From Diplonema japonicum (lineage: Eukaryota > Protista > Euglenozoa: Diplonemea), in contig OZ025656.1 in the NCBI GenBank assembly GCA_964019335.1, forward strand, positions 558,001-622,000: a stretch of DNA of 64,000 nt. Reading direction: 5' to 3'. Below, in pieces: positions 51 to 62,403 of the stretch (the first letter of the stretch is position 1; each line of letters begins with the position of its first letter). Both the position numbers and the translations under genes were made by a program. The notes under the pieces are model-generated. The model did no database searches and had not been told where the DNA came from. It was given only the letters and a program-made list of their open reading frames with translations.

Positions 51-1874
51 ATGGGGCCATTGGACTCAATATCGGTGAACATGTTGGAAGGGAAGAAGGC
101 AAGGAAACAGGGTGTAGCGCGGAAGGTTCTTGTAAATGCCGATGTGAGGTGTCTTGAAGTCGTGGGGCGAGACGTGTGGACGGGGGACAGGGGAGGTGTG
201 ATCACTGTGAGGAAGGTGCGGACAGGGGAAGCTGTGCTGACCATCGCGCCTCGATGTGGTGTCAACGTGTGGTGCATACGGTACGTAGAGCTACCCTCGG
301 AAGGCATGACGCGACACGGTTGCGGGCATGTGTGGACAGGCATGTCGAATGGTGCCATCGTCGTCTACGACTCCGCAACACGAAAGGAACTCAATCACTT
401 CTGCAAACACTCCGGCGGCATCTATCAAATAGTCGACCACAACAAACGGGTGTACAGTTGCTCCAACGACTTTGAGATATTCGAATGGAAGGCCTCCAAC
501 CACCAGTTCATCAGGCAATTCTCAGGACACAAAGGTTACGTGCGCTGCATTCTCCCCACAGGCCCCACGCTTCTCTCCGGATCTGACGACACAACAATAC
601 GTATCTGGGACGTGGCAACTGGTTCTCCTGTGCACATTGTGCAGCACCATACCAAAAGCGTGCATGCCATGGTCAGGGTTGGAAACCACATCTGGTCGGC
701 TGGCGGAAGCGTAGTCATCGTCTGGGATTTACACACACTGCAGGAGGTAGCACACCTTACAGAGCACTGCGCTGCGGTACTCACGCTATGTAGGGTCGGC
801 ACACGGGTGTACTCGGGTGGCGCAGACCAAGAGATCTACGCATGGGACGCGACGACCCACCGCTTGGTAGGAAGTTTTACGGACCACACTGGGTGGGTGT
901 ACACCATGTGCAACACGGCCAAGGTGGTAAGGTACTTTATGTGGTCAACATCCATCAACGACGGGTGCCTGCAGATATGGCACCACGACGAGTACCACCC
1001 GATGAACTCGTGTGCGAAGGACTGCGAGAATCGTGTTGCGGACCTGCTCACTACAAACCCAGAAGGGCGGCTGGCGGAGCATCTGCAAGACACAAATGAA
1101 AATCTACAGGACAGGTGCAAGATGTTAGAGCATGATTTGGCGACAAACAAGATGAGAGTTAACATTCTTGAAAACGAATTGCGGCATCAAAACCATGCGT
1201 TAGAGCAACAGATGGGTGTGCAGCATGCTCTGTCTGGTGTGCTGAGTGACGTGAACACTGGGCAGATCCCACGTTTGGAGACGACGATACTTGCGAAGGA
1301 CACGGAGCTGGACAAGTACGCTGCCGTGCTGAAAGGGAAGACGAACGAGGTGACGACACTGAAGACAACGATAAGTGAGAAAGACGCACGTATTAAAGAG
1401 TTGGAGAGAAAGCTGACTGTGCTGGAAATGCAGGTGGATGTGACAGAAAAAGCACACACCAAGCACAAGCAGGCCCATCTAAAGTACATTGAGTGCAACG
1501 TCGACGAGGTACTGAAGCAAGCCAGGGAGAGAGAGGAGTCCTTGAGGTCTCAGACTGAGAGACTGCGTGAACAGCTCAGCGCTGCTCTGGACCTCCGGAG
1601 AGTAAGGAAGATAGAGGATGACATGGAAGTGGAGGCAGCAAGGTATGCGAACTGTTCTCTTATAATTACAACTTTCTTTAACAGAGCGCTTCGGGCAGGC
1701 CGCCCCACTCCAGATGAGTTCCCCCACAAGGAACAAGACACAAAAGAGGCACAGAGTCTCAGCTTCTCCCGCCCAGTTAAGGCCTTGCGCCGATCTAATA
1801 CACACGCCGTACTGTCCCCACAACGCCCTGCACCGCCTCCTGGGAACCCCCGAGGATCCCGGTCCAGATATTAA
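51..1874 (+). CDS. WD40-repeat protein with C-terminal coiled coil
   Basis: WD repeats such as GHKGYVRCI...LLSGSDDTTIRIWD, HHTKSV...VIVWD and EHCAAV...VYSGGADQEIYAWD, followed by a heptad-rich E/K/L region. The true start could be ATG 81. Confidence 0.85.
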   Translation: MGPLDSISVNMLEGKKARKQGVARKVLVNADVRCLEVVGRDVWTGDRGGVITVRKVRTGEAVLTIAPRCGVNVWCIRYVELPSEGMTRHGCGHVWTGMSNGAIVVYDSATRKELNHFCKHSGGIYQIVDHNKRVYSCSNDFEIFEWKASNHQFIRQFSGHKGYVRCILPTGPTLLSGSDDTTIRIWDVATGSPVHIVQHHTKSVHAMVRVGNHIWSAGGSVVIVWDLHTLQEVAHLTEHCAAVLTLCRVGTRVYSGGADQEIYAWDATTHRLVGSFTDHTGWVYTMCNTAKVVRYFMWSTSINDGCLQIWHHDEYHPMNSCAKDCENRVADLLTTNPEGRLAEHLQDTNENLQDRCKMLEHDLATNKMRVNILENELRHQNHALEQQMGVQHALSGVLSDVNTGQIPRLETTILAKDTELDKYAAVLKGKTNEVTTLKTTISEKDARIKELERKLTVLEMQVDVTEKAHTKHKQAHLKYIECNVDEVLKQAREREESLRSQTERLREQLSAALDLRRVRKIEDDMEVEAARYANCSLIITTFFNRALRAGRPTPDEFPHKEQDTKEAQSLSFSRPVKALRRSNTHAVLSPQRPAPPPGNPRGSRSRY

Positions 1875-2026
1875 ACTTTAGTAAACACGCTTAAATAATG
1901 TACTCATGCTTCATGCTATTTAGACTTAACGTAGATAGATAAACCTGTTAGAATATTATCTTATTATTTTTTAGTCCCATGTTTTTCTAATCAACAACTA
2001 GCCCCCGCCCCTCTTATGTTGACACA

Positions 2027-3219
2027 ATGAGCAGAGGTGCATACGTTACGGTGAAACACATTGAACAATGGGAGTATGTGTGTCTGCGTGATGGTGAAGT
2101 TTGCGGTGGGGAAGGAGAATGGGAGGTAGTGGACACTGAGAGGGGTTTTATGCTGGCGGGTGAAGGGGGTGTGCTGGAAGTAAATGAGATAAAGGAGTGG
2201 AAAGTGATAGCTTTAGGCGATGGGTCTGTTGGAATCGAGGCTGTAGGCGAGCAAGTCTATCTTGACATGTCTGATGAAGAAGAGGTCTTTACCAGCGAAG
2301 ATCGCCCTGCCGCGTGGATGGTTGCTGTCACGAAGCTCCCTGTCATAGATATGTCTGAGCTGACCACATCTCCTGCGAAGGTTAGCAAGGCGATCCTCTC
2401 AGCTGCGTCACAAGTCGGATTCTTTGCAGTTGTCAACCATGGGCTGGAACAAAGCGCAGAGCCCCTCATTGACACTGCTCACCGCACATTGCCTATAACG
2501 TCAACGCCATTGATCAAAACAAACCTTGCCTCGTCTACAGGGCACGTGAAGACTTCCACCCACGAGGGACCGGCCCTTCTTGAACTCCCTCCGTGGTGGC
2601 CCGTCGAAGAAGAGCACCGTGTCGATGAGTACTTCACAGCAGCAGTAGAGCTCGGGCAGCGTGTGTTGAACTGCATTGCAACTGCCTTAGACATCGAGGT
2701 GCCGGAACCATACAGCATACTCCGCATGATGTGCTACACAAGCTGTTCCGAGCCCGGGGTAACTGGTTTAGAAGCTCACACCGACAAAGACTGGTTGACC
2801 GTACTCCTTCAAGACGGCACTGCAGGTTTGCAAGTGGAGGGCCGTGGGTTTTCTGACTGGTTAGACATCCCTACAGCCCCTTCAGTCATCTTGAACATCG
2901 GTGACGCCTTGCAAGTCGCTTCAAATGGAAGATTAAAATCGAAAATACACCGAGCGAAACTGCCCGACACAGGCAGGCGTCTCTCTTTCCCTTTATTCAT
3001 CGAGCCAACAACGTGGCCTGAAGAGAATCCTCGCCAAGGGGCTCTTTACATTGTCCGTGAGTTGTACTCATTATTTTTTATCTGCCAAAAAGAAAGCCTC
3101 GTACAGGTTACACACGAGAGTCTTTGAGAAATGACGTTGGAACACACCCATAGGATCGCGAATACCAAGATTTGTCGGCAGAAGAAGAGCCAAGGCGAGT
3201 GCGAACAGTTACACAGTAA
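2027..3219 (+). CDS. 2-oxoglutarate/Fe(II) dioxygenase (IPNS/DIOX_N type) with an extra N-terminal beta-rich domain
   Basis: LPVIDMS and GFFAVVNHG (DIOX_N), HTD...IHR...RLS metal and 2OG motifs, NIGDALQVASNGRLKS. A probable intron at 3101-3153 (GTACAG...CCCATAG) extends the frame to TAA 3219. Without splicing the ORF ends at 3127. Confidence 0.85.
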
Positions 3220-3494
3220 GAATAATTGTGAGTGGATTAGTAAGGATCAGTTTTATTGGGCTAGAGACGGGTCCCCCCTTGCAGCTGACCATCAGCTGTG
3301 TGCAGTACCAGAGGTATGTTTTCCATTCCAACACATTACACGTAACCCAAAACACAGCACAAACACAAACCGGCCCCACATCCGTCGGGAGGCTGTGCAC
3401 TTATGTAGCAAGTATCCACCTTACCTTGTTCTGGTCTTCTTGTGGCCAAAGAAAGCACCCATTTTATTGGCACCCTTATCTTTACCAAAGGACG

Positions 3495-5321
3495 ATGCTC
3501 AACTACAATATACTCGTAGTCGCAGTCTGCGTGGCATTAGAAAGTTGCTTCCGAGGATCCCACCATGTGTGGAGAGATAAAGTAGATGCAGCGCAGGTCA
3601 CTATAGGAGTTTTTTCCACTCTAGCGTTCATCTGCGGTGTTGGTCTTGCATTAGGATGGATGGAAGGGTGGCGGCAGTGGGTCATACGGGTGCTCCCTAT
3701 CGTAGCAGCACTCGGTTCACGGGAAGTGGCACTCAGCGCACTTGGTTCATGTTGTTCGTCGCAGCTAACAGTTGTCTACTCCTCAGCCTCCATGCTCCTT
3801 CTTGCGATCCCTTTGTACATGGCACTCCGAGAACGGGTAACCACAAGCTCCTACTTCGCAATCGTTGCAAGTCTCTTGCTGTACTTCGTCCAATATGATG
3901 GTGAGCAAGCATGCCGCCTTGAGTGCCTGCTGCCAGTGTTCGCAGTATCTGCAGGTTTGTCTCTTGGTATCCTACTCTTCTTCATATACGGCAACGAGAC
4001 TGATGGGGGAAGCCTTGCCCCCGCCTTGATGACAGTCGGGCTCCTCTCCTTTGGACACCTATTTGGAGGCCCGGCCCCTTTCGTCCCCATCATTCTTCAA
4101 GGGATGAACAGGGTGGTTCTCTTCACTTGCATTATCCGGACCAGCAGGATGTCTTCTGCTTTCATAGACGTGTACTTCGCTGCTCTTGGTGGGTCTTGCC
4201 TTCCTGAGGTTTTTGGTGGCTCTGTTGCAAAGCTCTGCATGGTGGTCGTGTGCGGCATTGTGTGTGTGCTGCACCTTACGATCAAGCGCAGCGAGGTGTT
4301 GGATCCTTCAAAACCCGGGTACGCAACGGGTAAACTAGCATCTCTCGTGGCGGTGGCGGTGTTGGTTTTTTTTGTCGCCTATCCCAATGACATGGCGCAG
4401 CGACAGCAGGTCAAACAAGTTAAGATAGAGCAAGTGAAGCGGAGGGAGGCTGACCTCCCGAATGACAAGCTTGTGAACGGAGTGATCGTGTACATGGACT
4501 CAAAGAGGAAGCCCATCGAGAAGGCACTAAGGCTGGTACAAGAGAATTTCTTATCTTGCTGGCCCTACCCGGTGCATGTGTTCAAAGAAGGCGTGACGGA
4601 TGCCTATAAAACGCACGTGCGTCGACTCACCACATCGGAGGTAAGCTTCACGGAGATCGGTCACATCTTCGATAAGCCGCCGAATGACATCGCCATGGAT
4701 ACGGCAAACTTCTGGATCAAGGTTATGAAGTACGGGAGGGGACACCACTTCGGGTACAGGATGATGTGCAGGTTCTTCTCGGGATTGTTTGCACAGTACG
4801 AGTTTTTGAAGCAGTACGACTTTTACTGGAGGCTGGACACCGACTCATGGATAAGGGAACCAGTCTTGGTGGACCCTTTTAGACACATGGTGGTGAAGGG
4901 TTGCAAGTATGGGCACATGTCGAAGCTGCACAGGGACGCGCAGGACGTGGTGGTGAAGTTGTACGACACAGTCTTGGAGTGGGCAGCAGAGCATGGTGTG
5001 CCTGGAAGGAACATCAGCAGACTGAACAGGTACGTGCTGGACGGTGGGGGGAAGTACAAGAGGCCGATGTACTACAACAACTTCGAGATCGCCAGCGTGC
5101 CGTGGATCACGGGGCCTGATTATACATCATTCTTTGAATACCTAGATTTCACGGATGGGTTCATGAAGTACCGGTGGGGGGACGCACCTGTTCGCACACT
5201 GGCCGTGCACCTCATGCTGGAGGATGATGAGATCTGTGACTTCGAGGCGTTAGTACCCTACGTGCACGGCTACTTCAACAATAAGGCGTACAAGAATACT
5301 GGTATGTATAAAGTACCATAG
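3495..5321 (+). CDS. Fusion of a multi-TM DMT/EamA/nucleotide-sugar-transporter-like domain and a GT15 (Kre2/Mnt1-like) alpha-mannosyltransferase, copy A
   Basis: C-terminal GT15 motifs GYRMMCRFFSG, YDFYWRLDTD, YNNFEI and RWGDAPV. The N-terminal ~300 aa has about 9-10 hydrophobic segments, including the DMT-like LYMALRERVT. Start set at ATG 3495 by alignment with the paralog. Confidence 0.8.
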   Translation: MLNYNILVVAVCVALESCFRGSHHVWRDKVDAAQVTIGVFSTLAFICGVGLALGWMEGWRQWVIRVLPIVAALGSREVALSALGSCCSSQLTVVYSSASMLLLAIPLYMALRERVTTSSYFAIVASLLLYFVQYDGEQACRLECLLPVFAVSAGLSLGILLFFIYGNETDGGSLAPALMTVGLLSFGHLFGGPAPFVPIILQGMNRVVLFTCIIRTSRMSSAFIDVYFAALGGSCLPEVFGGSVAKLCMVVVCGIVCVLHLTIKRSEVLDPSKPGYATGKLASLVAVAVLVFFVAYPNDMAQRQQVKQVKIEQVKRREADLPNDKLVNGVIVYMDSKRKPIEKALRLVQENFLSCWPYPVHVFKEGVTDAYKTHVRRLTTSEVSFTEIGHIFDKPPNDIAMDTANFWIKVMKYGRGHHFGYRMMCRFFSGLFAQYEFLKQYDFYWRLDTDSWIREPVLVDPFRHMVVKGCKYGHMSKLHRDAQDVVVKLYDTVLEWAAEHGVPGRNISRLNRYVLDGGGKYKRPMYYNNFEIASVPWITGPDYTSFFEYLDFTDGFMKYRWGDAPVRTLAVHLMLEDDEICDFEALVPYVHGYFNNKAYKNTGMYKVP

Positions 5322-5481
5322 CTCAATTCACAATACCACAGACCACACACGACCGGAGTGCCCATCCAAGCACATGCAGAAGGTAGACGGCCACTACACC
5401 GCCAACGCAACGGACGTTCACTAATACTTTCTTTTTATTCTTGACATTATGTGGACTCTGCACCCTGCACACAGGTTAACG

Positions 5482-7410
5482 ATGCTGGGGACGGAGGTGA
5501 TACTGATAAGCATATGCACTTTGCTGGAAAATGGCTTTCGACAGTACATCGAGACGGGCCCTGAGACGGGGCTCAAGCCGAGCTGGATGGTGTGTCTCGG
5601 GTCCCTTGGCAGTTTGCTTATTCTGTTCGGCATGGGGGTATCGCTAGATGCATTGGCAGGGTGGCGGCAGTGGATCGTGCGTGTGGTTCCTATCGCGGTG
5701 GCACTCAGTGTGCGGGAGATCGCGCTCAATTTACTAGGGTCGTGTTGCGGGTTACAGCTAGTAGTCGTGTACTCCTCAGCCTCCATGCTCCTTCTTGCGA
5801 TCCCTTTGTACCTTGCGATCCGTGAGCAGTTCACCACAAGCTCTTACTGTGCAATCATCGCAAGTCTCTTGCTGTTCCTCGTTGAGTACGATGGTGAGCA
5901 AGCATGCCGCCTTGAGTGCCTGCTGCCAGTGTTCGCAGTATCTGCAGGTTTGTCTCTTGGTATCCTACTCTTCTTCATATACGGCAACGAGACTGATGGG
6001 GGAAGCCTTGCCCCCGCCTTGATGACAGTCGGGCTCCTCTCCTTTGGACACCTATTTGGAGGCCCGGCCCCTTTCGTCCCCATCATTCTTCAAGGGATGA
6101 ACAGGGTGGTTCTCTTCACTTGCATTATCCGGACCAGCAGGATGTCTTCTCCTTTCACAGATGTGTACTTCGCTGCTCTTGGTGGGTCTTGCCTTCCTGA
6201 GGTTTTTGGTGGCTCTGTTGCAAAGCTCAGCTTGGTGGTCGTGTGCGGAACGATCTGCATGGTGCACCTTACCGTCGTCCGACCGAAGGTGACGGAGACC
6301 CTGCGGCTGGGCGTGGCAAGGGGCAAGCTTGGATCGGTCCTTTCCCTGGTGGTGTTGATGTTCGTGGCTTTCTACCCAATCGCGGGTGCAGGAGCCGAGG
6401 GGAGTGGTAGCGGTACTGGTGTGCGCCACAAGGCAGGCGCCAAGACACACGCTCCATCAGGCGTGTCGCACGGACCAGTGGCGACAGAGCTAAAACCTTT
6501 TTACGAGACATATGACAAGGGGACGAAGAAGGAAGACAGGCTTGTGAACGGAGTGATCGTGTACATGGACTCAAAGAGGAAGCCCATCGAGAAGGCATTA
6601 ATTTTGGTACAAGAGAACTTCTTAGTCTGCTGGCCCTACCCGGTGCATGTGTTCAAAGAGGGCGTGACGGAGAAGTACAAGGAGGGCGTCAGGTCCCTCA
6701 CCACGTCGAAAGTAAGCTTCACGGAGATCGGGCACTTCTTCGACGCGCCACCCGGCAACATGAGCATGACAACGCTTAACTTCTGGATAGACGTGATGAA
6801 GTACGGGAGGGGGCACCACTTCGGGTACAGGATGATGTGCAGGTTCTTCTCGGGATTGTTTGCACAGTACGAGTTTTTGAAGCAGTACGACTTTTACTGG
6901 AGGCTGGACACCGACTCATGGATAAGGGATCAAGTCTTGGTGGACCCTTTTAGACACATGGTGGTGAAGGGTTGCAGGTACGGGCACATCTCTCGGCACC
7001 ACTCCGATGTGGAGTCGGTGACACGCAGGCTGTACCCGACAGTCTTGGAGTGGGCGCATGAGTACAATGCTCCTGATAGCAATGTGACAAGGCTCAACAA
7101 CGTGGTGACCTCACGAAACGGGGAGTACAGGAGGCTTATGTACTACAACAACTTCGAGATCGCCAGCGTGCCGTGGATCACGGGGCCTGATTATACATCA
7201 TTCTTTGAATACCTAGATTTCACGGATGGGTTCATGAAGTACCGGTGGGGGGACGCACCTGTTCGCACACTGGCCGTGCACCTCATGATGGGAGAGGAGG
7301 AGATTTGCGATTTTGAAAGCTATCTTCCCTACCACCACGGCCGTTACAAGAACAAGGCCTATGACCCTGGGAGTATGTGGAGGGGGGGAAAAAAAAAGAA
7401 AAAAAATTAA
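5482..7410 (+). CDS. DMT-like transporter domain + GT15 mannosyltransferase fusion, copy B (tandem paralog)
   Basis: Same motifs as copy A, with nucleotide-identical blocks shared with it. ATG 5482 follows a CACAG acceptor-like site. Confidence 0.8.
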   Translation: MLGTEVILISICTLLENGFRQYIETGPETGLKPSWMVCLGSLGSLLILFGMGVSLDALAGWRQWIVRVVPIAVALSVREIALNLLGSCCGLQLVVVYSSASMLLLAIPLYLAIREQFTTSSYCAIIASLLLFLVEYDGEQACRLECLLPVFAVSAGLSLGILLFFIYGNETDGGSLAPALMTVGLLSFGHLFGGPAPFVPIILQGMNRVVLFTCIIRTSRMSSPFTDVYFAALGGSCLPEVFGGSVAKLSLVVVCGTICMVHLTVVRPKVTETLRLGVARGKLGSVLSLVVLMFVAFYPIAGAGAEGSGSGTGVRHKAGAKTHAPSGVSHGPVATELKPFYETYDKGTKKEDRLVNGVIVYMDSKRKPIEKALILVQENFLVCWPYPVHVFKEGVTEKYKEGVRSLTTSKVSFTEIGHFFDAPPGNMSMTTLNFWIDVMKYGRGHHFGYRMMCRFFSGLFAQYEFLKQYDFYWRLDTDSWIRDQVLVDPFRHMVVKGCRYGHISRHHSDVESVTRRLYPTVLEWAHEYNAPDSNVTRLNNVVTSRNGEYRRLMYYNNFEIASVPWITGPDYTSFFEYLDFTDGFMKYRWGDAPVRTLAVHLMMGEEEICDFESYLPYHHGRYKNKAYDPGSMWRGGKKKKKN

Positions 7411-7899
7411 ATCCCAGGATTAAAGCGCCCCATGTGCCCCTCGAGTATTATGTACATGGATGAATCTGCAAAAATGCCGTACTATCCATGGCCCCCTAGA
7501 TATTACGAATAGGGGGAAGGAGAAAAGAGAGAGAGAGAGAAATGAAAAAAAAAAATAAAGATTAATGATTGCGGTATCATACGCATTGCCCCAGCAAGGG
7601 TTTCCCCTTTTCTTCTTTTTTTGCCATATCCTTAATTTTCAATTTTGTTCTCAAAGAAAAAGTAACACTGTGCTTTATCAAGGGGGCCAAAAAAAAAACA
7701 CTTTTTTTAATCTAGAAAACTAAAGTTTTAATTTAAAAATACGGGGGGGGGGGGGGGGGAGAGATCACAGGAAAAAGAACTGAAATAGGACGATGGGGAA
7801 GAAAAAATGAGGAGGGTGTCAATGTGTTAACAGAAAACTCTTTTTCTTCATGTTTTCCCCTCCCCCCACCCTTTTTTTTTTAAAAAAAGAAAAAAATGG

Positions 7900-8241
7900 T
7901 TCTTGGGCAGTGTTGACCACCTGTGCCTGTGTTGTTTTCGTTTGAAAGTCGAGGATGGTGGATATTTAAAAAAAAAGAAGGATTGCACTCGTTTTTTAAT
8001 GTAGTGGGAACGTTGCTACCTCCCCGCCTTCCTCTTACCACTGTGAGGTATTTAAGAAGGTTTTGAAGAAACGAGGGAAGGAAAAAAAAAAGATGCACGG
8101 CCCAACAATTTCTCAATCTTTTTTTTTTCTCCGGCAATCATTACTCCCCCCACCTGTTTTCTGTGAATCCGAGGAAAAAAAAGGGGGGGAAAGGGGACCC
8201 CCCCCCATGTGTCTTGTGTACTAGGCTGAGCTGCCCAAGAA
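7900..8241 (+). other. Fold-back structured intergenic/UTR element
   Basis: An 11-bp perfect inverted repeat, TTCTTGGGCAG (7900-7910) / CTGCCCAAGAA (8231-8241), encloses nested complementary segments. Confidence 0.5.
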
Positions 8242-8667
8242 ACCTTTTTTTTTTTAATATCCAGCTTTAACACTTTTCTTTTTTTCTTCTTAACACTTCT
8301 TTTTTTTTTTTCCCCTCTACAGAACGAAGAACATTTTTATTTTCTAAAAGAAAAAAAAAAGAAATAACCACCACCACCACCCCCCCCCCCCCCCCCCCCC
8401 CTTCTGCGCTTCGGTTTTAGCGATGCTTGTCCCAGGTTAACCCAAGGGCTAAAGACCAAGACATTTCTTCTTTTTTTTTTGTTTTTTTTTTTTGTTTTTT
8501 TTTTTTTTTAAAAAAAAAGCTTGATTTACTTATTTATTCTATTTGTTTTCTTTTTTTCTTTCTTTTTTTTTTATTTGCTTCCATTCTCACCCTAATTTAT
8601 AGGATTTCCCTTGCTTTTTTTTCTCTCTCTTTTTCTACACACGGTTTTTTGGGTTAACGAAACCACA

Positions 8668-11398: not shown

Positions 11399-11780
11399 AG
11401 GTCTTTTGATTTTTTTTTTTTTCTTATCTTGTCGCCTTCATGAGGAAGCTAGCGACAGGCAAGAGTTCTGTGGATACATTCACTCCGTCTCCGTGGGCAA
11501 GTCGGCACTAACTGCGAGAGTGTAGCAACCAAAGCCTTTTTTTTTCTTGTTTTTTTTTTTTTTTTTTTTTTTGAAGGAAAGCCGTTGTTAACACGTGGCG
11601 ACACCCCCTCCCCCTCCCCCTCCCTTTTTATTTTTTAAGCTCAATTCCTTTTGTTACATCGTTCTTTTCATTTCTGTTTCCACCAACCTCCAACAGGTGC
11701 GGCTCCTCAGGACCAACGAACGATGCGCAGCACTTGCCCGGCAACAAAACGGTAGTTTGAGCATTGACCACCCAACGACT

Positions 11781-14700
11781 ATGGGGCACAAGGAGCTTCT
11801 CGAGGCGTTCTTCAAAAGCTACGATGAAAGCGGCGTGGCGAAGGTAGACGGCCTCCTCAGCAAACATGCGGGCAACGAGAAGGCGGTGATGGAAAAGCTT
11901 GACGAGAAGTACCAGTGCGCATTCTTCAACAGCGCGTTTGATATGATGGCTGTCTTCAAAGCCAACGACCCGAGCAAGGTGGACTCCATCCCTGCCCTGT
12001 TGGGGAAGAACAAGGGTCGCGAGAAGGATGTCGCAGCAAAGGTGCGAATGAGGTTCGGTACAACGGGCGGCACAGCAGGCGCCTCTGATTATGCTACAAG
12101 GGTGCGAAACTTATTCCAAAAATACGACCCGTCCAAAGCAGCAAACACGGACGCCTTTCTTCAGAAGTACGCCGGCAATGAGGAGGCCTTTATTGCTAAG
12201 CTTGTAGAGAAGTACGGTCCTGAGCCAGGTGGAGCATCTGCACCAGCAACGCCAAGCGGTGGCGGCACAGGTGGTGCGTCAAGCTATGCTGCGAGGGTAA
12301 GAGGCATTTTTGAGAAATATGACCCTCCCAAGGCTGCGAACACAGATGCTTTCCTTCAGAAGTACGCTGGCAACGAAGAGGCCTTCATCGCCAAACTGGT
12401 CGAGAAGTACGGACCTGAACCTTCTGCATCCACACCAGCCGCAGGGGCGTCACCACGTAGCCATGCAGCACGTGTAAGAAGCATCTTTGAAAAGTACGAC
12501 CCTTCCAAGGCTGCAAACACCGATGCTTTCCTTCAGAAGTATGCTGGCAACGAAGAAGCGTTTATTGCTAAACTGGTCGAGAAGTACGGACCCGAGCCTG
12601 AGGCAGCAGCGCCTGCAGCAGGCGGAGGACCCAGTGACTATGTAACGAGAGTACGGAGTTTGTTTCAAAAATATGACCCTAGCAAAGCTGCGCACACCGA
12701 TACTTTCCTTCAGAAGTACGCTGGCAACGAGGAAGCTTTGATAGCCAAGCTGGTAGAGAAGTACGGCCCAGAGCCGGCATCCGGAGCATCTGCAGCCACA
12801 ACACCGCGCGACCACGCCTCACGTATTAGGAGCATCTTCGAGAAATATGACCCGTCGAAAGCAGCAAACACTGATGCCTTCCTTCAGAAATATGCTGGCA
12901 ACGAAGAGGCATTCATCGCTAAGTTGGTTGAAAAGTACGGCCCAGAGCCAGAAGCCCCTGCTGCAGGTGGGGCTGCTCCTCGTGACTATGCAACACGTAT
13001 CAGGAGTATCTTCGAGAAATACGACCCTTCCAAGGCTGCGAACACGAGTGCCTTCCTTCAGAAGTACGCTGGCAACGAAGAGGCCTTCATCGCCAAACTG
13101 GTCGAGAAGTACGGACCTGAGCCGGTAGCCTCTGCAGCACCCGCTGGTGGAAGTGGCCAGGCGTCGACGCTGCCCCCCAAGCCACCGTCTGACTGGGCAG
13201 CAAGGATTGAGGCGATCTTTAAGAAGTCGGAGCCTGCAAAATGTGGAAGCGCAGAGGCTTTGTGCGCCAAATATGCCGGGCAGGAAGCTTCGGTTTTCAA
13301 GAAGATCATAGGAAAGTACGGCCCCGAACCGTACTGGGCAGAGCGGCTGACACGTCTGTTCAAGGCGCATGGGAAAGAAGCACTGCTTGCGAAGATCCCA
13401 GACTACCTCACGGAACACGCTGGAAACGAAGAAGAGCTTGTCACTAAGCTCGTTGGGAAGCTTGGACCGGAGCCCACTGAAGCAGTGCCGGCAGGTGGTG
13501 CTGCGGCTGCGGAAACAGCTGCGGCGGGTTCGACAGACAACATGACGATGAAGGCGAAAGTGGTGAGATTCCTGTTTTACGTAGACTCCAGCACAGTAGT
13601 GGGGTGGATCGAGAAGCTGGAGCCCGGCGGGAAGTATCACGGCAAGGAGTCTGATCTGTACGCAGCACTGCTGAACAGGCATAAAAGCGACCCCTCACCT
13701 GCCGACCCCCCTCAGAAGAGCGACACCAAAGCACGTGTTGTGAACATGTACGCCCTGTACGCTCCTGAGAAGATAGCCGGTGTGGAGCCCATCCTCGACA
13801 GGTACAAAGGGAGGGAGGAGGAGCTTATCGCTACCCTCGTAAAGAAGTACGGCGACGAGCCATGCACCGGCGGCAGTGACGGGAAGGCTAAGACCAACAG
13901 GACGTACAAAGAGAGGATCGAAGCCATCTACCAGAAGTATTGCCCAGAGAAGGTCGGGAACGTGCCCGGTATCCTTGAGAAGTACAAAGGAAAGGAGTCG
14001 GATATCATACAAGTATGGCGACACTAGCACACACACCTAACTACCATCTGCAGAAGCTCGTCAGCATGTACGGTCCGGAACCATCTGGCGAAAGCCCAGA
14101 AGAGTTCCTTGCACGAGTGACAAGGTTCTATAAGAAGTACAACGCGGAGAAGGTGTGCCCCCACCCCAGTCTTAAACGTAATTCACATCAGGTGGACACT
14201 GTGCCGGACATTGTTGCAAAGTACAAGGGCAGAGAGGAGCAGCTCATGGAGGGATTGGTGAAGAAGTACGGACCCGAACCGGAGGAGGAAGAGGAAGAAG
14301 AAGAAGAAGAAGGAACGGAACGAGAGCAACAAGAAAGAAGAGAAACGAAGGAATGGGCAAAACTGGACGCGGACAGCAGAATGGTGCACGTAGGCGAGAG
14401 GGCCGCGAGATGGGATGTAGAAGATCAGGACGAGGCCGAGTGGGAAGAGCTGGTGGAAACAGAACAACGGAAGCGAGACATAGTAAAGAAGAGGTCAGAG
14501 GCGAACGGCCTGCTACGAAGGGAATACTATGACTTGTTGTTGAAGAAGCTCAAGGACAAGATCAGGGAAGAGAAGCGGCGCCACCGTGCACTCCTAGACG
14601 AAAGGATGTCGGTGTACGACCAGCTGCAGACCAACAAGGACTCCATGAAGTACTACGAAAGGTTGGCAAGACGAAACATGGAGGAAAAGGAGAAACGGCA

Positions 14701-15728: not shown

Positions 15729-16463
15729 ATGTCGGAGCCCCTTTGGCAGGAAGAGTTTGTGGAGACAAGCGATAGCGTGATCCAGGTGAAGGTAACAATA
15801 CCGGAGAAGATACAAAGCAGGACGATGGTGGTGGTGACGCACCCTTACGGGATGCTAGGGGGTGATCTTGACAACCCTGTGTGCATGGCCATAGGGAGGA
15901 CGTGCGGGGAGAAAGGCTACGTCACTGTGCGTCTGAACTTCCGTGGGTCAGGTGAGAGCAGCGGTGCTGGGAGCTGGAGGGGTAGTGGCGAGCAAGAAGA
16001 TGTCCTTGCCATCATCAAGCACTACAAAGCCCACCCTTGCTGGGAAGGCACTCCACCGGAAGTATGCCTTATTGGCTACAGTTATGGATCCCTGATATCG
16101 GGTTCACTAGTGACACGCCCCGAGGCATCTTGCAAGGCATATGTTGGCATAGCCTATCCACACTCTGTCGCGTGGGCCCTCACACTCTTCCGCACCTCTG
16201 AGTTATTGAAACCCCTCCGTTCCTCTCCTTCTGTGCCTAAGCTTTTCTTCCATGGAACTCGTGACCAGTTCACGTCGCTGCCCACCGCTGTTTCCCGAGT
16301 GGAGAGCATGGGGAACTCAGCCTCCTTGGCTACCTTGGACGGTGCAGACCATTTCTTTGGGAGGAGGAAGACAGCGGTATGGGTGGATGGATTTTAAAAA
16401 AAAAAAAAAAAAAACCAGGAAATTGTCTCGCGTATTTCAACGTTCTTGGACACCGCTTGTTAG
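15729..16463 (+). CDS. Alpha/beta-hydrolase fold protein
   Basis: THPYGMLGG..N, NFRGSGES, GYSYG nucleophile elbow, HGTRD and GADHFF. Intron 16377-16418 gives the C-terminus EIVSRISTFLDTAC*. Confidence 0.9.
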
Positions 16464-17293
16464 TTTTTTGAAAATATTTGTGAAAAAAGAAAATAAAGGG
16501 GAGGAGGGAAGGTGGCAGAAACTTTAGAGTGTTTCTTTTTGTAATTTAAAAAAAGAAAAAAAAAAAAAAGGGAAGTAAGGAAACGATGCTTTTTTGAGTC
16601 GTGTTGAGGTGACATTATGTTATTCTTCTTCTTGTTAATAACTCTCTCTTTGGTCTCCTTTGTGATTCTTTTATCAAGGAATGGGGGGCAAAAAAAAAAA
16701 AAAAACGATTTTTTTTTTTGTTTCCTTAATACACATACTTGAAAAAGGGATTCAGAGAAGGGAAAATGGAATTGTTTTTTAAAAACACATGATAGGGGTC
16801 CTTTCCTTTCTATTCCCCTTTTTATCCTCTTTTTAAAATTTTTTTTTGTTAATACCGTTTTCCAAAAATATGCTCTGCGAGAAATAATGCTGATATCTTC
16901 TTCTTTTTTTTTTTTGTAGAACATATTTTTATGAACACAGTACGTGCCCTCATGCTTGTCCCTCCGCGAGATTCGTTTATACCATCCTCTGAAAAGAAAA
17001 AAGAAAAAAAAAGAATAGTGATTGTATTCATAGAGAGAAAAAAAAAAAGCAAAGTAATAAACCTGGTGGACCGGAAAGCGATCGCTAAAAGGAAGAAAAG
17101 AAAGAAAAAGGAAATATTGAAACTAATAATAATAAAAAAACGTCTTTTGAAAAAAAAAAAAAAAAAAAAATACAATTAGTAAAAATCATCATCAAGAAAA
17201 AAAAAAAAGAAAAAACGTGAATTTAAATATTCTTAGGTTTTGCAGCGACCTCCTCCTTGCTGTCACCCCCTATCGCTTCTTAGTGCAGGGGAT

Positions 17294-17438
17294 AATCGAT
17301 GCTTTCATGAGCCAAGGGGCTGGCTCTTCACAGCCTTGTCCACAGTGCAATAGAGGGGCGCTGGTAGGTGTTGTTGATGGGTGCCGAAGCTGAGAGCTGC
17401 CTGCAGTCCTTAACGCGGGGTTTGCACTTGCATCGATT
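17294..17438 (+). other. Candidate structured RNA element
   Basis: A 9-bp closing stem AATCGATGC/GCATCGATT with internal stems GAGCCA/TGGCTC and AGTGCAA/TTGCACT. Confidence 0.4.
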
Positions 17439-18859
17439 TCTTTCCCCCCCTCCCCTTTCTTTTTTCCGATCCCCCTTTGCGTATCTGGTTTTTTCGTCAT
17501 AAAAAAAAGAATATTCCGGGGGAAAGAAGAAAAGCGTTCAAGAACAGCAACTGAAAAGAAAGGCTTTCCCCCCCACTGTAAGTTTCTTCCTCCCCCCATT
17601 TTTTCCACCATCAAACTGTATAAAAGAATAAGGGGAAAAAGCCCCGAAGAAAAATCTCCTGTTTTCTTTTTATTTCCTTTTTTTTTTCCCCCTCAATTTC
17701 CCCCCAGAATATATGTGTGTGGGGGATAAAAAAATAGAGGTTTTTTTTTCTTTTTTCTTCCCCCTCCCCCCCTTTGGCGAGGCCTTCAAATGATCAAAGG
17801 GTTGGCCCTCATCGAAGAGCTGGAGAGCATCGCAGCGAAGCGTAAAAGCTTTTTTTTTTTTTTTTTTATTCTCCTCCTTGCTCGATCGCGTAGCACCATT
17901 TTTTTTTTAAATACTTTTTTTTTCCCTATCAACTTCGTTGATGGGATGCTATTATGCACTTTTTTCCCCTTTTTTTCTTTCTTTCTGAGGCTCTAAAGAG
18001 AGACCCCTCATGGTTCCTCAAGTGAGATGTGTTCTTTTCAACAGAGTCGTTTTTTTTTGTGTTTATTGTTTGTACACAAAGACGACCCTCTTCAGGTTGA
18101 TATATAATATTATAAAATATTATAAAAAAAAAGAATCTGGTGAAAACAACAAACAAACAAAGTGCCGTTCTTTTTTTTTTTTTTTTCTTCTTCTCTCTTC
18201 ATGTGAAACACCATAAGATATTGCTCGTTTTTGGAAAGCGAAGCAGGCAGGCAGGCAGATCCCCCCTTTTTTTTTTCCATCTTTGCAGGAACAAGTCTTT
18301 GACTTTCCTAAACAGACAAAAGGGGAACGTTGGCCACGTGTTTACGGGTTAAAAGCCTTCTCCAGGCTTCTACCCGGCACATGCACACCCAACAGCCAGT
18401 TCTTCTTTTATTTCTTCTTTCTTTTTTTTTTCTCTTCTTCCTATCGAACTGGAGGATAAACAATAATATATATAATAAAAAAAAAAGGTTGGATTTTTGC
18501 AGCAAGAAAGTGTACATTTGTTAAAAGTGTCGACACACAGAAACTTCTGGAAGAAAGAAAGAATGAAATAAAAAAGGGGAGGAGGTGGAACCGTTTACTT
18601 TACTTTCATTTGTTTGTTTCACTGCTACTGCTCGTCACCTCCCCTCCCCTCAATAAGCTTTGCTGCAGGGTGGTAAGGTACAGGTCTTTGCAGCAAATTC
18701 TTTTTACCCCATCCAGGTCGGAAACTGTTTGAAACCCAACTTTGACCCTACTTTCGAACTTTTGACCCCCCCCCACCTTCCAGTACCCTTTTCTTACTTT
18801 TTGTTGCTACTTGTCATCTTTGTTTAAAAAAAAAATACAAACACCCAAAGACAAGAATC

Positions 18860-30500: not shown

Positions 30501-32375
30501 ACCTCGACTTCCCCGGTGGTGGTGTGATGGTGCTCGGGTGCGGTGCCTACCGTATTGGTAGCAGTTGCGAGTTCGATTGGTGCGCCGTGTCGTGCATCAG
30601 GACCCTCAACAAGCTGGGCATCAAGTCCATCGTTGTGAACTACAACCCCGAGACCGTGTCCACCGACTACGACGAGAGCGACAGGCTGTACTTCGAGGAG
30701 CTGTCTCTGGAGTCCGTGATCGACATCTACCACAAGGAGGGAGCTAGGGGGGTATGTTGTTTTCGCTACATATTCATATGTTATCTTCAAAGGTTGTCGT
30801 GTCTGTTGGTGGACAGATCCCCAACAACTTGGTGGTGCCCCTTCACAAGGCCGGTGTGACCATTCTCGGTACCTCGCCTGAGAGCATCGACTCCTGCGAG
30901 GACAGGAACAAGTTCAGCAAGCTGTGTGACACTCTGAGCATCGACCAGCCGCGTTGGATCGAGGCGAGCTCCATCGATGAGGCCAAGGCCTTCGCCAAGA
31001 AGGTTGAGTACCCCGTCCTGGTGAGGCCTTCGTACGTGCTGTCCGGTATGCGTGTTTTACTGATGTCCACTGAATGCAGGCGCGGCCATGAACGTTGCTG
31101 ACAACGAGGAGGACTTCGTGTCGTACCTGGCACAGGCCACCAACGTGAACAGGGAGCACCCCGTCGTGATCTCTAAGTTCATCAAGAACGCCAAGGAGAT
31201 TGAGATGGACGCCGTTGCCAAGGACGGGCGCATCATCAACTACGCTGTCTCCGAGCACGTTGAGAACGCTGGTGTGCACTCCGGTGACGCGACGCTCTGC
31301 CTCCCTGCGCAGAAGCTGTACGTCGAGACCGTGCGAAGAATCAAGCACATCATGAGCTCCCTGTGCGCACGCCTCAACATCACCGGACCTGTCAACGCGC
31401 AGTTCCTGTCTAAGAACAACGACATCAAGGTATGCAGCACCTCCAACTATCCATCACACTAGATCATCGAGTGCAACCTGAGGGCGAGCAGGTCGTTCCC
31501 GTTCGTCTCGAAGACCTTCGACGTCAACTTCATCGAGCTTGCCACCAAGGCCATGGTACGAGGGGAAACGAGAAAAAACAACTATTTATACTAAACAAAC
31601 AGATCGGTGCCCCGTGCCCCCCGTTCAACATCCACCTGTACGACACTGAGTGGGTGTGCTGCAAGAGCCCGATGTTCTCGTTCACCAGGCTGCTGGTATG
31701 AACAAACAAAATTTAAGAAATATAACAAAAAAAAAGGGAGCGGACCCTATCACAAGGGTGGAGATGGCGAGCACTGGTGAGGTTGCGTGCTTTGGTGTGA
31801 ACCAGCACGAGGCGCTGCTGAAGTCGATGCTTGCAACTGGGTTCAAGCTGCCCAACAGGACGAAGAACATCTTGGTCTCCCTGGGGCCGATCAAGGCGAA
31901 GGTGGCATTCGTGAGCTACATGAAGAGCTTGGCGAAGATGGGGTACAAGCTGTACTGCACTGAGAACACCTTCAAGTTCTACGAGGAGGAGGGTGTGGAG
32001 GTCACACGCATCGGGAAGCCTGGCGCGGAGAAGGACACTGAAATACCAGAGGCTCTGGACTTCATCAGAAACGGGAAGATTGACCTTATCATCAACGTGC
32101 CAGGGTCGTTCTCCTCTGACCAAATCACTGCAGGTTACCAGATGAGGAGGTCTGCCGTGGACTTTGGGCTCCCGCTCCTCACCAACGTTCAGCTGGCGGT
32201 TGCCCTTGTGCAGGCGATAGAACGTGTGGACCTGGACAACATGGTTGTGAGGTCTTGGAACGAGTACGTGAACCCTGGTTACAGACAGGAGGTCCTCACC
32301 ACTAAACCCGGCACCACCCCCCTCCACCGCCCTATTGAGAACCCCACCAACCTTCCCGAGGCCATTTCCTGGTGA
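27538..32375 (+). CDS. CPSII: Glutamine-dependent carbamoyl-phosphate synthetase II (fused GATase + synthetase + MGS domain), 10 exons
   Basis: [52 protein letters not shown] and [12 protein letters not shown]. Introns at 29919-29955, 30025-30062, 30301-30335, 30457-30500, 30752-30792, 31046-31079, 31430-31462, 31556-31602 and 31696-31736 each restore the frame and conserved residues. Confidence 0.97.
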
Positions 32376-32429
32376 TATTAGTGTCTTTTTTGTTTTTGTT
32401 TTTGTTTTTTACGAGATAAATTTCGGAGC

Positions 32430-32460
<31 letters not shown>

Positions 32461-59693: not shown

Positions 59694-60070
59694 GCATGAG
59701 GATATGCCCCTATGCTTTTTTTTTTATGTATAACTCGAGCCGGGTTTTTTTTCAAGGGTGAAAAAATAAAGTTTTTTTTTTTTTCAATTTTTTTTACTTT
59801 TTATATGTCAACTCCACATTCCTGTCCTTTTTTTTTTGGAGAGGTGTCAAAAAAAAGATCATGTCTGAAACGCCAGCATTATCTGGCATATTGCAGCTTG
59901 TATGTTTGCAAGCGGGATGACGGACAAAGGAGTCGCACACACCGATGATGAGCTGGCCACTGGTTTTTGGCTGTGCCTCCCACCCTTTCAAACCTGGCTC
60001 TTGTTAAATAAAACAACGTATTAAGTAAATACAAAGCATTATTCCACTTGTGGTAGCAGGTTTAACTCGT

Positions 60071-60103
<33 letters not shown>

Positions 60104-60184
60104 TTCGCGAGCGCAGCGAGTGGACTAAAAAAAAAACCCCCTGCCACCACGCGTGAAATAATGGTAGGTGCTTAATAAATAGCT

Positions 60185-60229
<45 letters not shown>

Positions 60230-61993: not shown

Positions 61994-62024
<31 letters not shown>

Positions 62025-62354
62025 GCCCCCCTCCCCTCGGCCCATGCGGTGCATGCAAAAAGGTTTTTTTGTTCCATTTAATGTTTCTCCGAAAGAAGGA
62101 GGAGAAAAAAAAAAATATTTGCACTCAGAGTCTCGGTGGTTCTCATTAGTCGCGGTGCTGATCACCATTATGCACGAAGCCAAACACAGTGCAGGGGGAG
62201 GAAAAAGAAGAGGGATGACAAAATCCTCAATTCTCTTCTTTTCTTTCCTTTTTTTTTTCTTGCTATGTTTCCAGATCTTCTTCCCTCAACACAAGCAACA
62301 CAGAGGGACTCAGGGTCAACCTGGACACAGTAGGACATAAACCGAATCCTGCCC

Positions 62355-62403
<49 letters not shown>

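What the first reader, a model, noticed from the sequence alone, without database searches (positions are those of the whole stretch)
3495..7410. Transporter-glycosyltransferase fusion: DMT/nucleotide-sugar-transporter-like domain joined to a GT15 mannosyltransferase, in tandem
Seen: in both genes one uninterrupted ORF carries about 9-10 TM segments (with the DMT-like V.SSAS.L..AIPLY.ALRE..T motif), a further TM helix and stem, and a full GT15 domain. Known: Kre2/Mnt1 enzymes are single-pass type II Golgi proteins that use luminal GDP-mannose supplied by separate DMT-fold transporters (Vrg4, Leishmania LPG2). Inference: a self-supplying glycosylation module that channels the nucleotide sugar to its own active site, or a degenerate transporter used as an anchor or sensor. 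The metal-binding motif is RLDTD rather than fungal RVEP. This is the best candidate for an undescribed system in the window.
Basis: partly seen in the sequence, partly recalled or inferred. Interest (0 to 1): 0.82.

Follow-up and report, generated by a model that had tools for sequence, protein, structure and literature searches.

The report
Multi-pass membrane GT15 mannosyltransferase gene pair
Two neighbouring genes of a diplonemid-like protist each join an unclassified ten-helix membrane domain to an intact Kre2-type mannosyltransferase; the fusion is real and conserved in diplonemids, but nothing here shows the membrane domain is a sugar-nucleotide transporter.

Summary
Two tandem + strand genes each encode about 11 predicted TM helices, a variable stem and a Pfam GT15 domain (E 5e-38 and 5e-34).

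Corrections:
- Each gene has a short phase-1 intron near its 3' end (5302-5341 and 7373-7417).
- The true ends are therefore 5424 and 7512.
- Gene 2 probably starts at ATG 5482.

The same architecture occurs in Diplonema ambulator, D. papillatum, Rhynchopus and Flectonema, in transcript-derived complete ORFs. All other GT15 loci examined in this genome (at least 10) show at most two hydrophobic segments.

The catalytic domain keeps the Kre2p Tyr220, Asp361 and His388 equivalents. Glu247 is Asp (RLDTD), but ordinary paralogues carry that too.

The transporter reading is not supported:
- No Pfam DMT hit.
- No relative among 1.84 billion representatives apart from two GT15 fusions.
- hhalign gives 0.1-0.5% probability against this genome's own TPT, UAA and NST families. 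Those families recognise each other at 94-98%.
- A canonical stand-alone Vrg4-type GDP-mannose transporter exists elsewhere in the genome.

AlphaFold models were poor (pLDDT 54 and 49). DMT structures recur among weak fold hits but never rise above noise, so the fold stays open.

The N-domain is an orphan under purifying selection, with its conserved Cys and acidic residues on the predicted lumenal face. I rate it a new variant of a known enzyme kind, of moderate interest.

The parts
3495..5301 (+). Gene 1, exon 1 (602 codons + 1 nt): N-terminal 11-TM region, stem and GT15 domain
   Evidence: ORF. The ATG aligns with the start of the D. ambulator homologues. A polypyrimidine tract and AG lie upstream.
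3495..4391 (+). Gene 1 N-domain, aa 1-299: 11 predicted TM helices (10-TM orphan module plus the anchor helix TM11 at aa 276-298)
   Evidence: Hydropathy and DSSP helices of the AF2 models. No Pfam, PDB or DMT relationship. Invariant C86, C87, P106, L129, C140, C144, S156 and G233.
4392..4451 (+). Gene 1 stem (about aa 300-319), variable
   Evidence: dN/dS about 1 between the two genes over aa 301-325. Length and sequence vary across the family.
4452..5252 (+). Gene 1 GT15 (Kre2/Mnt1-type) catalytic domain, aa 320-586
   Evidence: PF01793 at E 5.3e-38. Kre2p 1S4N at E 3.8e-25 with the Tyr220, Asp361 and His388 equivalents kept.
4830..4844 (+). RLDTD (R446-D450): the DXD-type metal site aligned to Kre2p RVEPD
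   Evidence: Alignment to 1S4N. Invariant in the family. Glu of EPD/EPN and a His bind Mn2+ in the Kre2 family (PMC4546622).
5302..5341 (+). Gene 1 intron, 40 nt, GTATGT...CACAG, phase 1 (inferred)
   Evidence: Sequence. The exon 2 translation HTRPECPSKHM... continues the P0001 tail without a gap. Similar 35-50 nt introns occur in other genes of this genome.
5342..5424 (+). Gene 1 exon 2 with stop TAA at 5422-5424
5425..5481 (+). 57-nt spacer between the genes, with a pyrimidine tract (CTTTCTTTTTATTCTT) and AG before ATG 5482: candidate poly(A) and SL-acceptor region (inferred)
   Evidence: Sequence. SL trans-splicing of diplonemid genes is described in PMC10161547.
5482..7372 (+). Gene 2, exon 1 (an in-frame upstream ATG at 5449 is less likely to be the start)
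   Evidence: ORF. M at 5482 aligns with the homologues' first residue.
5482..6402 (+). Gene 2 N-domain (11 predicted TM helices), followed by a longer Gly/Ala/Ser-rich stem
6565..7320 (+). Gene 2 GT15 domain
   Evidence: PF01793 at E 5.5e-34, aa 373-624 of the 5449 ORF.
7373..7417 (+). Gene 2 intron, 45 nt, GTATGT...CCCAG, phase 1, at the same position as in gene 1 (inferred)
   Evidence: Sequence. The exon 2 translation closely matches the transcript-derived P0002 tail, and the alignment is gapless.
7418..7512 (+). Gene 2 exon 2 with stop TAG at 7510-7512
3897..4157 (+). Longest gene-conversion tract: 261 nt identical to 5890-6150 in gene 2. Others are 4170-4235, 4469-4526, 4743-4858, 4862-4905 and 5067-5216.
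   Evidence: Exact-match scan. Mosaic of 100% blocks against a background dS of about 1.

Best explanation
The locus holds two tandem paralogues that are partly homogenised by gene conversion. They belong to a GT15 alpha-mannosyltransferase subfamily whose members found here are all diplonemid and which is polytopic instead of single-pass. Each protein has 11 TM helices. The N-terminus is probably cytosolic, and helix 11 plays the part of the usual type II signal anchor. A fast-evolving stem follows, and then a lumenal GT-A catalytic domain with an intact Mn2+ and GDP-mannose site (DTD plus His, and the Kre2p Tyr220 and Asp361 equivalents). The enzyme therefore most likely transfers mannose from lumenal GDP-mannose to a glycoprotein or glycolipid acceptor in the Golgi or ER. 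GDP-mannose would be imported by the genome's separate Vrg4-type transporter. The first ten helices form an orphan membrane module, found only in these fusions, that is kept by purifying selection. Its best-conserved residues (two Cys pairs, D135, E137, E238) lie at the predicted lumenal membrane surface, next to the catalytic domain. I infer that the module works from the lumenal side as a fixed membrane platform. It would hold or orient the catalytic domain at the bilayer, and possibly present a membrane-bound acceptor or set localisation, rather than carry nucleotide sugar. Shown: the architecture, its conservation, catalytic-site integrity, absence of DMT sequence signal, and selection. 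Inferred: topology, lumenal location and the platform role.
For: - GT15 domain: Pfam hits and Kre2p alignment with catalytic residues kept.
- Metal ligands of the Kre2 family come from PMC4546622.
- About 11 TM helices.
- Charge distribution and conserved Cys placement fit an N-in, C-lumen topology.
- The fusion is conserved in 4 diplonemid genera, in complete transcript ORFs.
- GT15 domains of the fusions form one clade. Gene 1 and gene 2 each have a separate D. ambulator counterpart.
- dN/dS is 0.37-0.40 in unconverted parts of the N-domain, 0.40 in GT15 and about 1 in the stem.
- No ATG lies between TM10 and TM11 in gene 1 that could start a separate anchored enzyme.
- N-domain relatives: only GT15 fusions among 1.84e9 representatives, none as stand-alone proteins, and none elsewhere in this genome.
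- No DMT signal, with positive controls.
- A stand-alone Vrg4 homologue is present.
Against: - The N-domain's fold is unknown. Both AF2 models are of low confidence (pLDDT 53.6 and 48.6).
- A conserved mid-membrane Arg (R206) and other polar TM residues would also suit a transporter.
- Topology and compartment are inferred, not measured.
- There is no transcript evidence from this organism itself.
Confidence: 0.55

Rival explanations
1. Self-supplying module. The ten-helix domain is a very diverged DMT-fold nucleotide-sugar transporter that imports GDP-mannose and hands it to its own covalently attached GT15 domain.
For: - The 10+1 TM layout, very short loops and inferred cytosolic N-terminus match NST topology.
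- DMT structures recur among the weak fold hits of two models.
- There are conserved polar residues inside TM helices.
- NSTs and Golgi glycosyltransferases are known to form physical complexes (PMC6453868, listed).
Against: - No DMT Pfam hit in 9 diverse N-domains at E<=10.
- hhalign gives 0.1-0.5% against three NST families of the same genome, no better than reversed or shuffled controls, while the controls reach 94-98%.
- No FYNN or GALNK-type motif.
- The N-domain is only 17-23% identical between genera, while whole-protein identity is 37-44%.
- The conserved residues cluster at one membrane face, not along a central pathway.
- The genome has a canonical Vrg4 homologue.
- The Flectonema ORF lacks the first two helices.
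Confidence: 0.15
2. Pure anchor or sorting device. The ten helices have no substrate-related role and serve only for membrane anchoring, oligomerisation, ER exit or Golgi retention. They would be a built-in version of the polytopic adaptors that yeast Kre2-family enzymes need.
For: - Low sequence conservation of the N-domain compared with GT15.
- The closest Sulcionema relative is an ordinary single-pass enzyme inside the same clade, so the catalytic part works without the module.
- Yeast Ktr3 needs the 4-TM adaptor Svp26 for ER exit (PMC4001239, abstract).
Against: - Four invariant cysteines and conserved acidic residues on one face, with dN/dS of 0.37-0.40, suggest more than a greasy anchor.
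- Ten extra helices are an expensive anchor when one suffices in at least 10 paralogues of the same genome.
Confidence: 0.25
3. Not one protein. The two domains are separate gene products, through an internal SL acceptor or a mis-assembly, and the long ORF is incidental.
For: Polycistronic, SL-trans-spliced gene organisation in diplonemids (PMC10161547). There are no transcript data for this organism.
Against: - The same continuous ORF appears in Trinity transcripts of three other genera and in the D. papillatum gene model.
- Both window copies keep the frame across about 1.8 kb.
- No ATG is placed to start an anchored GT15 alone in gene 1.
- The N-domain is never found alone.
Confidence: 0.05

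Closest known systems
Kre2p/Mnt1p and the Ktr family (CAZy GT15, Pfam PF01793), fungal Golgi alpha-1,2-mannosyltransferases
   Same: The catalytic domain is homologous (E 3.8e-25 to 1S4N). The Tyr220, Asp361 and His388 equivalents and the metal-binding acidic residue are kept. A stem plus a TM helix lies directly upstream of the domain.
   Different: Fungal enzymes are single-pass type II proteins. Here ten further TM helices precede the anchor. The metal motif is DTD rather than EPD or EPN, a trait shared with ordinary non-fusion paralogues.
Vrg4 / LPG2 / SLC35 nucleotide-sugar transporters (DMT superfamily)
   Same: About ten TM helices with very short loops and probably cytosolic ends. They recur as weak structural neighbours of the low-confidence models.
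   Different: No sequence or profile similarity, with positive controls. No GDP-mannose motifs. Structural scores lie within noise. The true Vrg4 homologue of this genome is a separate gene.
Single-pass GT15 paralogues of the same genome and Sulcionema P0010
   Same: Same enzyme family. P0010 falls inside the fusion clade, and paralogue L008 shares RLDTD.
   Different: They show at most two hydrophobic segments, usually one N-terminal TM helix, and lack the ten-helix module.
Bacterial AT3-SGNH O-acetyltransferases (OafA/OafB type). This comparison rests on general knowledge, not on a test here.
   Same: The same logic of 10 TM helices plus an eleventh linking helix that places an enzyme domain on the far side of the membrane.
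   Different: No Acyl_transf_3 Pfam hit. Different chemistry and kingdom. This is an analogy only.

Membership tests
GT15 (Kre2/Mnt1, PF01793) | Match to the family profile above the curated cut-off | tested here: met
   131.7 and 118.4 bits against a 25-bit cut-off.
GT15 (Kre2/Mnt1, PF01793) | Mn2+ ligands: the acidic residue of the EPD/DXD-equivalent motif plus a C-terminal His | tested here: met
   D448 (in RLDTD) aligns with the Glu of Kre2p RVEPD, and H591 with the second His of YHH. The role of the Glu and His comes from the Ktr4p structure paper. Both are invariant in 12 sequences.
GT15 (Kre2/Mnt1, PF01793) | Kre2p Tyr220 and Asp361 equivalents (their catalytic role is from my own knowledge of the Kre2p structure paper, not read here) | tested here: met
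   Y421 in GYRMMCRF and D563 in RWGDAP align with them and are invariant.
GT15 (Kre2/Mnt1, PF01793) | GT-A fold of the catalytic domain | tested here: inconclusive
   The GT15 part of the full-length AF2 model has pLDDT 25-50. Even so, Kre2p, CmsA and Ktr4p are the top Foldseek hits at prob 0.97-0.99.
GT15 (Kre2/Mnt1, PF01793) | Single-pass type II membrane topology | tested here: not met
   11 TM helices. This is an architectural feature, not a catalytic one.
GT15 (Kre2/Mnt1, PF01793) | GDP-mannose-dependent alpha-mannosyl transfer | not testable with these tools
   Needs an enzyme assay.
DMT / nucleotide-sugar transporters (TPT PF03151, UAA PF08449, Nuc_sug_transp PF04142, EamA PF00892) | Match to any family profile of the clan | tested here: not met
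   None of 9 N-domains hits any of them at E<=10. The own-genome searches with PF03151, PF08449 and PF04142 list many loci but not the window genes.
DMT / nucleotide-sugar transporters (TPT PF03151, UAA PF08449, Nuc_sug_transp PF04142, EamA PF00892) | Profile-profile similarity to bona fide members | tested here: not met
   hhalign probability 0.1-0.5%, equal to reversed or block-shuffled controls. Controls: TPT-UAA 98%, TPT-NST 95%, UAA-NST 94%.
DMT / nucleotide-sugar transporters (TPT PF03151, UAA PF08449, Nuc_sug_transp PF04142, EamA PF00892) | Ten TM helices with both ends in the cytosol | tested here: inconclusive
   Ten helices before the anchor helix, and charge bias compatible with N-in. 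This is prediction only, and the layout is shared with many other folds.
DMT / nucleotide-sugar transporters (TPT PF03151, UAA PF08449, Nuc_sug_transp PF04142, EamA PF00892) | DMT fold (5+5 inverted repeat) | tested here: inconclusive
DMT / nucleotide-sugar transporters (TPT PF03151, UAA PF08449, Nuc_sug_transp PF04142, EamA PF00892) | GDP-mannose transporter motifs (FYNN, GALNK; motif identity from my own knowledge) | tested here: not met
   Absent from all 11 N-domains. YYNN is present in the genome's Vrg4 homologue L021.

The most novel reading that the evidence does not exclude
The ten-helix module is a DMT-fold or other transporter diverged beyond sequence recognition, and it channels GDP-mannose (or Mn2+, or a lipid-linked acceptor) directly to its covalently attached GT15 domain. 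I found no described natural transporter-glycosyltransferase fusion of the Golgi type in the literature searched.
Probability: 0.15. Interest if true: 0.85.

Novelty: new variant of a known kind. Interest (0 to 1): 0.5.

Why it matters
GT15 enzymes are textbook single-pass type II Golgi proteins. A conserved subfamily that carries ten extra membrane helices of no known family shows that diplonemids, among the most abundant marine protists, have rebuilt part of their glycosylation machinery.

The module is an orphan membrane domain with a clear partner enzyme. That gives a direct handle for working out its function: D. papillatum has an orthologue that could be tagged, truncated or knocked out.

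If the module does handle a substrate, it would be a natural example of substrate channelling between a membrane module and a Golgi glycosyltransferase. If it is only an anchor or sorting device, it bears on how Golgi enzymes are retained in Euglenozoa.

The corrected gene models, with 40-45 nt introns, also matter for annotating this genome.

Tried and rejected
**Searches for relatives of the N-domain that found nothing**
- Pfam on the whole proteins and on 9 N-domains found nothing for the N-domain.
- PDB sequence search found nothing, as a single sequence or as a profile.
- phmmer of the N-domain against 1.84e9 representatives found only two GT15 fusions.
- Word-index searches with the full-length profile and with the N-domain profile gave no new members and no stand-alone relatives.
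- Own-genome search, as protein and as profile, found only the pair itself.
- The metagenome scan found 66 GT15 loci, all at or below 39% identity and without the N-domain. L103 has a C-terminal multi-TM region that is unrelated to it.

**Tests that were uninformative or negative**
- hhalign against the TPT, UAA and NST families was negative, with controls.
- The internal-repeat test was uninformative because the control also failed.

**Structure**
- Two AlphaFold jobs both gave low confidence, because only about 10 sequences exist.
- Five fold searches gave nothing above noise for the N-domain.

**Rejected ideas**
- RLDTD as a special feature of the fusion: paralogues share it.
- Frameshift or homopolymer error as the cause of the truncated C-termini: rejected in favour of introns. 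Both junctions have GTATGT...CAG, restore a gapless alignment, and match introns in other genes.

**Tools and steps not available**
- The look-up of encoding contigs and the protein-atlas search were closed, so genomic context in relatives and language-model neighbours could not be examined.
- Exon 1 was searched on its own and exon 2 was only translated.


Full report
**What is there**

The + strand carries two adjacent ORFs, 3495-5321 (608 aa from the ATG) and 5449-7410 (653 aa). Both match Pfam PF01793 (Glyco_transf_15) far above the cut-off in their C-terminal halves, at E 5.3e-38 and 5.5e-34. Pfam finds nothing in the first 300 or so residues. Hydropathy shows 8-10 strongly hydrophobic stretches there. 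The secondary structure of two independent AlphaFold runs resolves 11 TM-length helices joined by loops of 2-8 residues. In the full-length model these are at residues 2-24, 32-52, 60-86, 89-113, 118-134, 142-166, 175-189, 196-217, 224-241, 244-268 and 276-298; the N-domain model gives near-identical boundaries. A stem helix and the catalytic domain follow.

**Corrections to the gene models**

Both ORFs stop just before a C-terminal tail (RPxCPS..M...) that all homologues possess. In both genes that tail is encoded a few dozen bases downstream, in another frame.

- In gene 1, GTATGT begins at 5302 and CACAG ends at 5341. The downstream piece 5344-5424 reads HTRPECPSKHMQKVDGHY... up to TAA.
- In gene 2, GTATGT begins at 7373 and CCCAG ends at 7417. 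The piece 7420-7512 reads LKRPMCPSSIMYMDESAKMPYYPWPPRYYE up to TAG. This closely matches the tail of the transcript-derived D. ambulator protein P0002.

Removing 40 and 45 nt respectively gives gapless alignments, with a phase-1 junction at the same position in both genes. Two unrelated genes of the same genome show the same kind of 35-50 nt GTA...CAG interruption, exactly where a Pfam match is split. I therefore read these as short spliceosomal introns, not frameshifts.

Exon 1 was searched alone and exon 2 was only translated.

Gene 2 most likely begins at ATG 5482, which aligns with the first residue of gene 1 and of the homologues. This leaves a 57-nt spacer containing a pyrimidine tract and an AG.

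**Whose genes are these**

The word-index searches with gene 1 and with the family profile returned 11 proteins between them. Cluster look-up and the source names identify:

- Diplonema ambulator (64% identity);
- Flectonema neradi;
- Rhynchopus humris;
- Diplonema papillatum, whose protein NCBI names 'Glycolipid 2-alpha-mannosyltransferase';
- Sulcionema specki;
- two unnamed ENA genome proteins (a third, P0011, surfaced only as a cluster member of the Rhynchopus protein);
- P0012, a distant 268-aa GT15-only metagenome protein (31% identity).

The window therefore belongs to a diplonemid-like euglenozoan with a 62.5 Mb assembly in 132 contigs. All neighbouring genes lie on the same strand and are functionally unrelated: a WD40 protein, a 2OG-Fe(II) oxygenase, a coiled-coil protein and a SHIPPO-repeat protein. 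That fits polycistronic organisation (PMC10161547).

**The fusion is real and conserved**

All full-length relatives have the multi-TM region in front of GT15. Three of them are complete ORFs from assembled transcripts, which is indirect evidence for one mRNA.

The genome contains at least 12 GT15 loci. Only the window pair has the multi-TM region; the other loci show at most two hydrophobic segments, usually a single N-terminal one.

In a maximum-likelihood tree of GT15 domains the fusion proteins form one clade (91/97). Gene 1 is nearest to D. ambulator isoform i8 (79% identity) and gene 2 to i12, i5 and i7 (78%). The duplication is therefore older than the species split. The single-pass Sulcionema protein sits inside that clade.

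A scan of 241 million metagenome records found 66 GT15 loci. All were at or below 39% identity and none carried the N-domain.

**The tandem copies exchange sequence**

Between the two genes there are exact identical tracts:

| Gene 1 | Gene 2 | Length (nt) |
|---|---|---|
| 3897-4157 | 5890-6150 | 261 |
| 5067-5216 | 7138-7287 | 150 |
| 4743-4858 | 6814-6929 | 116 |

Shorter identical tracts also occur. They are embedded in sequence with dS of about 1. This is a gene-conversion mosaic.

In the unconverted parts of the N-domain dN/dS is 0.37-0.40. In GT15 it is 0.40, and in the stem about 1. The membrane domain is thus under purifying selection of similar strength to the enzyme domain.

**The catalytic domain looks competent**

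phmmer against PDB sequences finds Kre2p/Mnt1p (1S4N) at E 3.8e-25. It also finds the A. fumigatus Ktr4-type enzyme 7BOO (named CmsA/Ktr4) and yeast Ktr4p. In the printed alignment:

- the Tyr of Kre2p SYRHMCRY aligns with Y421;
- the Asp of RWGDAP aligns with D563;
- the second His of YHH aligns with H591;
- the Glu of RVEPD aligns with D448 in RLDTD.

All four are invariant in the family. The Ktr4p structure paper states that the Kre2 family has EPD or EPN in place of DXD, and that the Glu and a His bind Mn2+ (PMC4546622). The DTD here is a conservative, more canonical variant. It is not peculiar to the fusion, because single-pass paralogues of this genome have RLDTD (L008) or RVDDD (L003).

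**Is the N-domain a DMT or nucleotide-sugar transporter?**

Sequence evidence is uniformly negative:

- No DMT-clan Pfam family matches any of 9 diverse N-domains, even at E<=10.
- No PDB sequence is hit by the single sequence or by the profile.
- phmmer against 1.84 billion cluster representatives finds only two proteins, both GT15 fusions.
- A profile search for stand-alone proteins finds none.
- The genome itself has no other copy.

I then built alignments of this genome's own TPT (8 sequences), UAA (4) and Nuc_sug_transp (5) proteins. With hhalign the three families recognise one another at 98%, 95% and 94% probability. The N-domain alignment scores 0.1-0.5% against each, no better than reversed or block-shuffled versions of itself. 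No FYNN or GALNK-type motif is present.

The genome also encodes a canonical Vrg4 homologue on another contig, at E 8.4e-39 to C. albicans Vrg4 and 7.4e-34 to yeast Vrg4. Lumenal GDP-mannose supply therefore does not depend on the fusion.

Structural evidence is inconclusive. With only about 10 sequences, AlphaFold gave pLDDT 53.6 for the N-domain alone and 48.6 for the full length.

- Foldseek found nothing at E<=1e-3.
- DMT structures are nevertheless conspicuous among the weak hits of both models: YddG, Vrg4, CMP-Sia transporter and LicB in the first, and TPT, SLC35B1 and CST in the second. E values are 0.14-1 and prob reaches 0.75.
- These values lie below the tool's stated noise level for helical bundles.

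I take this as a lead only. I estimate roughly a one-in-three chance of a DMT-like fold and a smaller chance (about 0.15) of real nucleotide-sugar transport.

**What the N-domain does show**

Charge distribution and helix parity fit a cytosolic N-terminus and a lumenal C-terminus after 11 helices. Basic residues sit in the loops after helices 2, 4, 8 and 10. That places GT15 in the lumen, as expected for the family.

Under this topology the invariant residues C86 and C87 (end of helix 3) and C140 and C144 (loop 5/6) fall on the lumenal side. So do the near-invariant D135, E137 and E238.

Positions at 75% identity or more make up 15 of 108 lumenal-side positions. They make up only 6 of 113 cytosolic-side positions. 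Conserved mid-membrane residues include S156, R206, G233 and C253.

N-domain identity between genera is only 17-23%, against 37-44% over the whole protein.

**Most likely mechanism**

This is a lumenal, Mn2+ and GDP-mannose-dependent mannosyltransferase whose usual signal anchor has been extended by a family-specific ten-helix module. The module's conserved surface faces the lumen, next to the catalytic domain. I infer a platform role: fixing the catalytic domain at the membrane, possibly presenting a membrane-bound acceptor or controlling localisation (confidence 0.55).

Rivals:
- pure anchor or sorting device, by analogy with the polytopic adaptor Svp26 that yeast Ktr3 needs (PMC4001239): 0.25;
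- self-supplying transporter-enzyme fusion: 0.15;
- two separate products: 0.05.

**Novelty**

The sequences exist in public databases under a generic GT15 name. The full-text searches found no description of a polytopic GT15 or of this domain. I rate it a new variant of a known kind, and of moderate interest.

**Limits**

- There are no transcript data for this organism.
- The search of earlier findings returned nothing for this place.

Noticed in passing
window 5302-5341 and 7373-7417; also L036:1468-1505(-) and L026:1443-1495(-): Very short (35-50 nt) GT-AG introns, often GTATG...(C)CAG, appear to be common in this genome. They truncate naive ORF calls and split Pfam matches in several genes (NST, UAA, GT15 loci).
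   Followed up: partly
window 3897-4157 = 5890-6150; 5067-5216 = 7138-7287; 4743-4858 = 6814-6929: Blocks of 100% nucleotide identity between the tandem genes lie inside otherwise diverged sequence (dS about 1). This is a gene-conversion mosaic. D. ambulator Trinity 'isoforms' i8, i12, i5 and i7 share identical N-terminal parts, which may reflect the same process or assembly chimeras.
   Followed up: yes
L025 (G000:C54:344393-348253), ORF L025:1477-3162(-): A 562-aa protein with a UAA-family transporter (E 9e-31) preceded by about 260 aa. That N-terminal part gives weak sulfotransferase hits (E 0.006-0.01, below cut-off), including a P-loop-like start. It may be a genuine enzyme-transporter fusion of the DMT kind in the same genome.
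   Followed up: partly
L024 (G000:C15:25043-28930), ORF L024:1393-3255(-): A 621-aa protein combining a partial TauE/SafE sulfite-exporter domain (E 3e-16) with a UAA-family transporter (E 3e-36).
   Followed up: partly
L103 (metagenome contig Ga0256878_1002341), ORF 54-3449: A 1132-aa ORF with an N-terminal TM helix, a GT15 domain and then about 7 C-terminal TM segments with no Pfam match. This is another polytopic GT15 with the opposite domain order. It is unrelated to the diplonemid N-domain (hhalign 0.05%).
   Followed up: partly
window 7513-8640: A long spacer after gene 2 made of homopolymer and low-complexity runs (G15, C26, long T and A runs) lies before the next gene, in contrast to the 57-nt spacer between the two GT15 genes.
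   Followed up: no
window 11595-14027: An ORF with about nine tandem copies of a roughly 45-aa unit (..FEKYDPSKAANTDAFLQKYAGNEEAFIAKLVEKYGPEP..). It has no convincing Pfam family.
   Followed up: no
window 16001-18000, 32001-34000, 60001-64000: AT-rich stretches (GC 0.35-0.40) stand against a background of about 0.52. I did not examine them.
   Followed up: no
L021 (G000:C15:750959-754804), ORF 1420-2508: The canonical stand-alone GDP-mannose transporter of this genome (E 8e-39 to C. albicans Vrg4), with a YYNN motif.
   Followed up: yes
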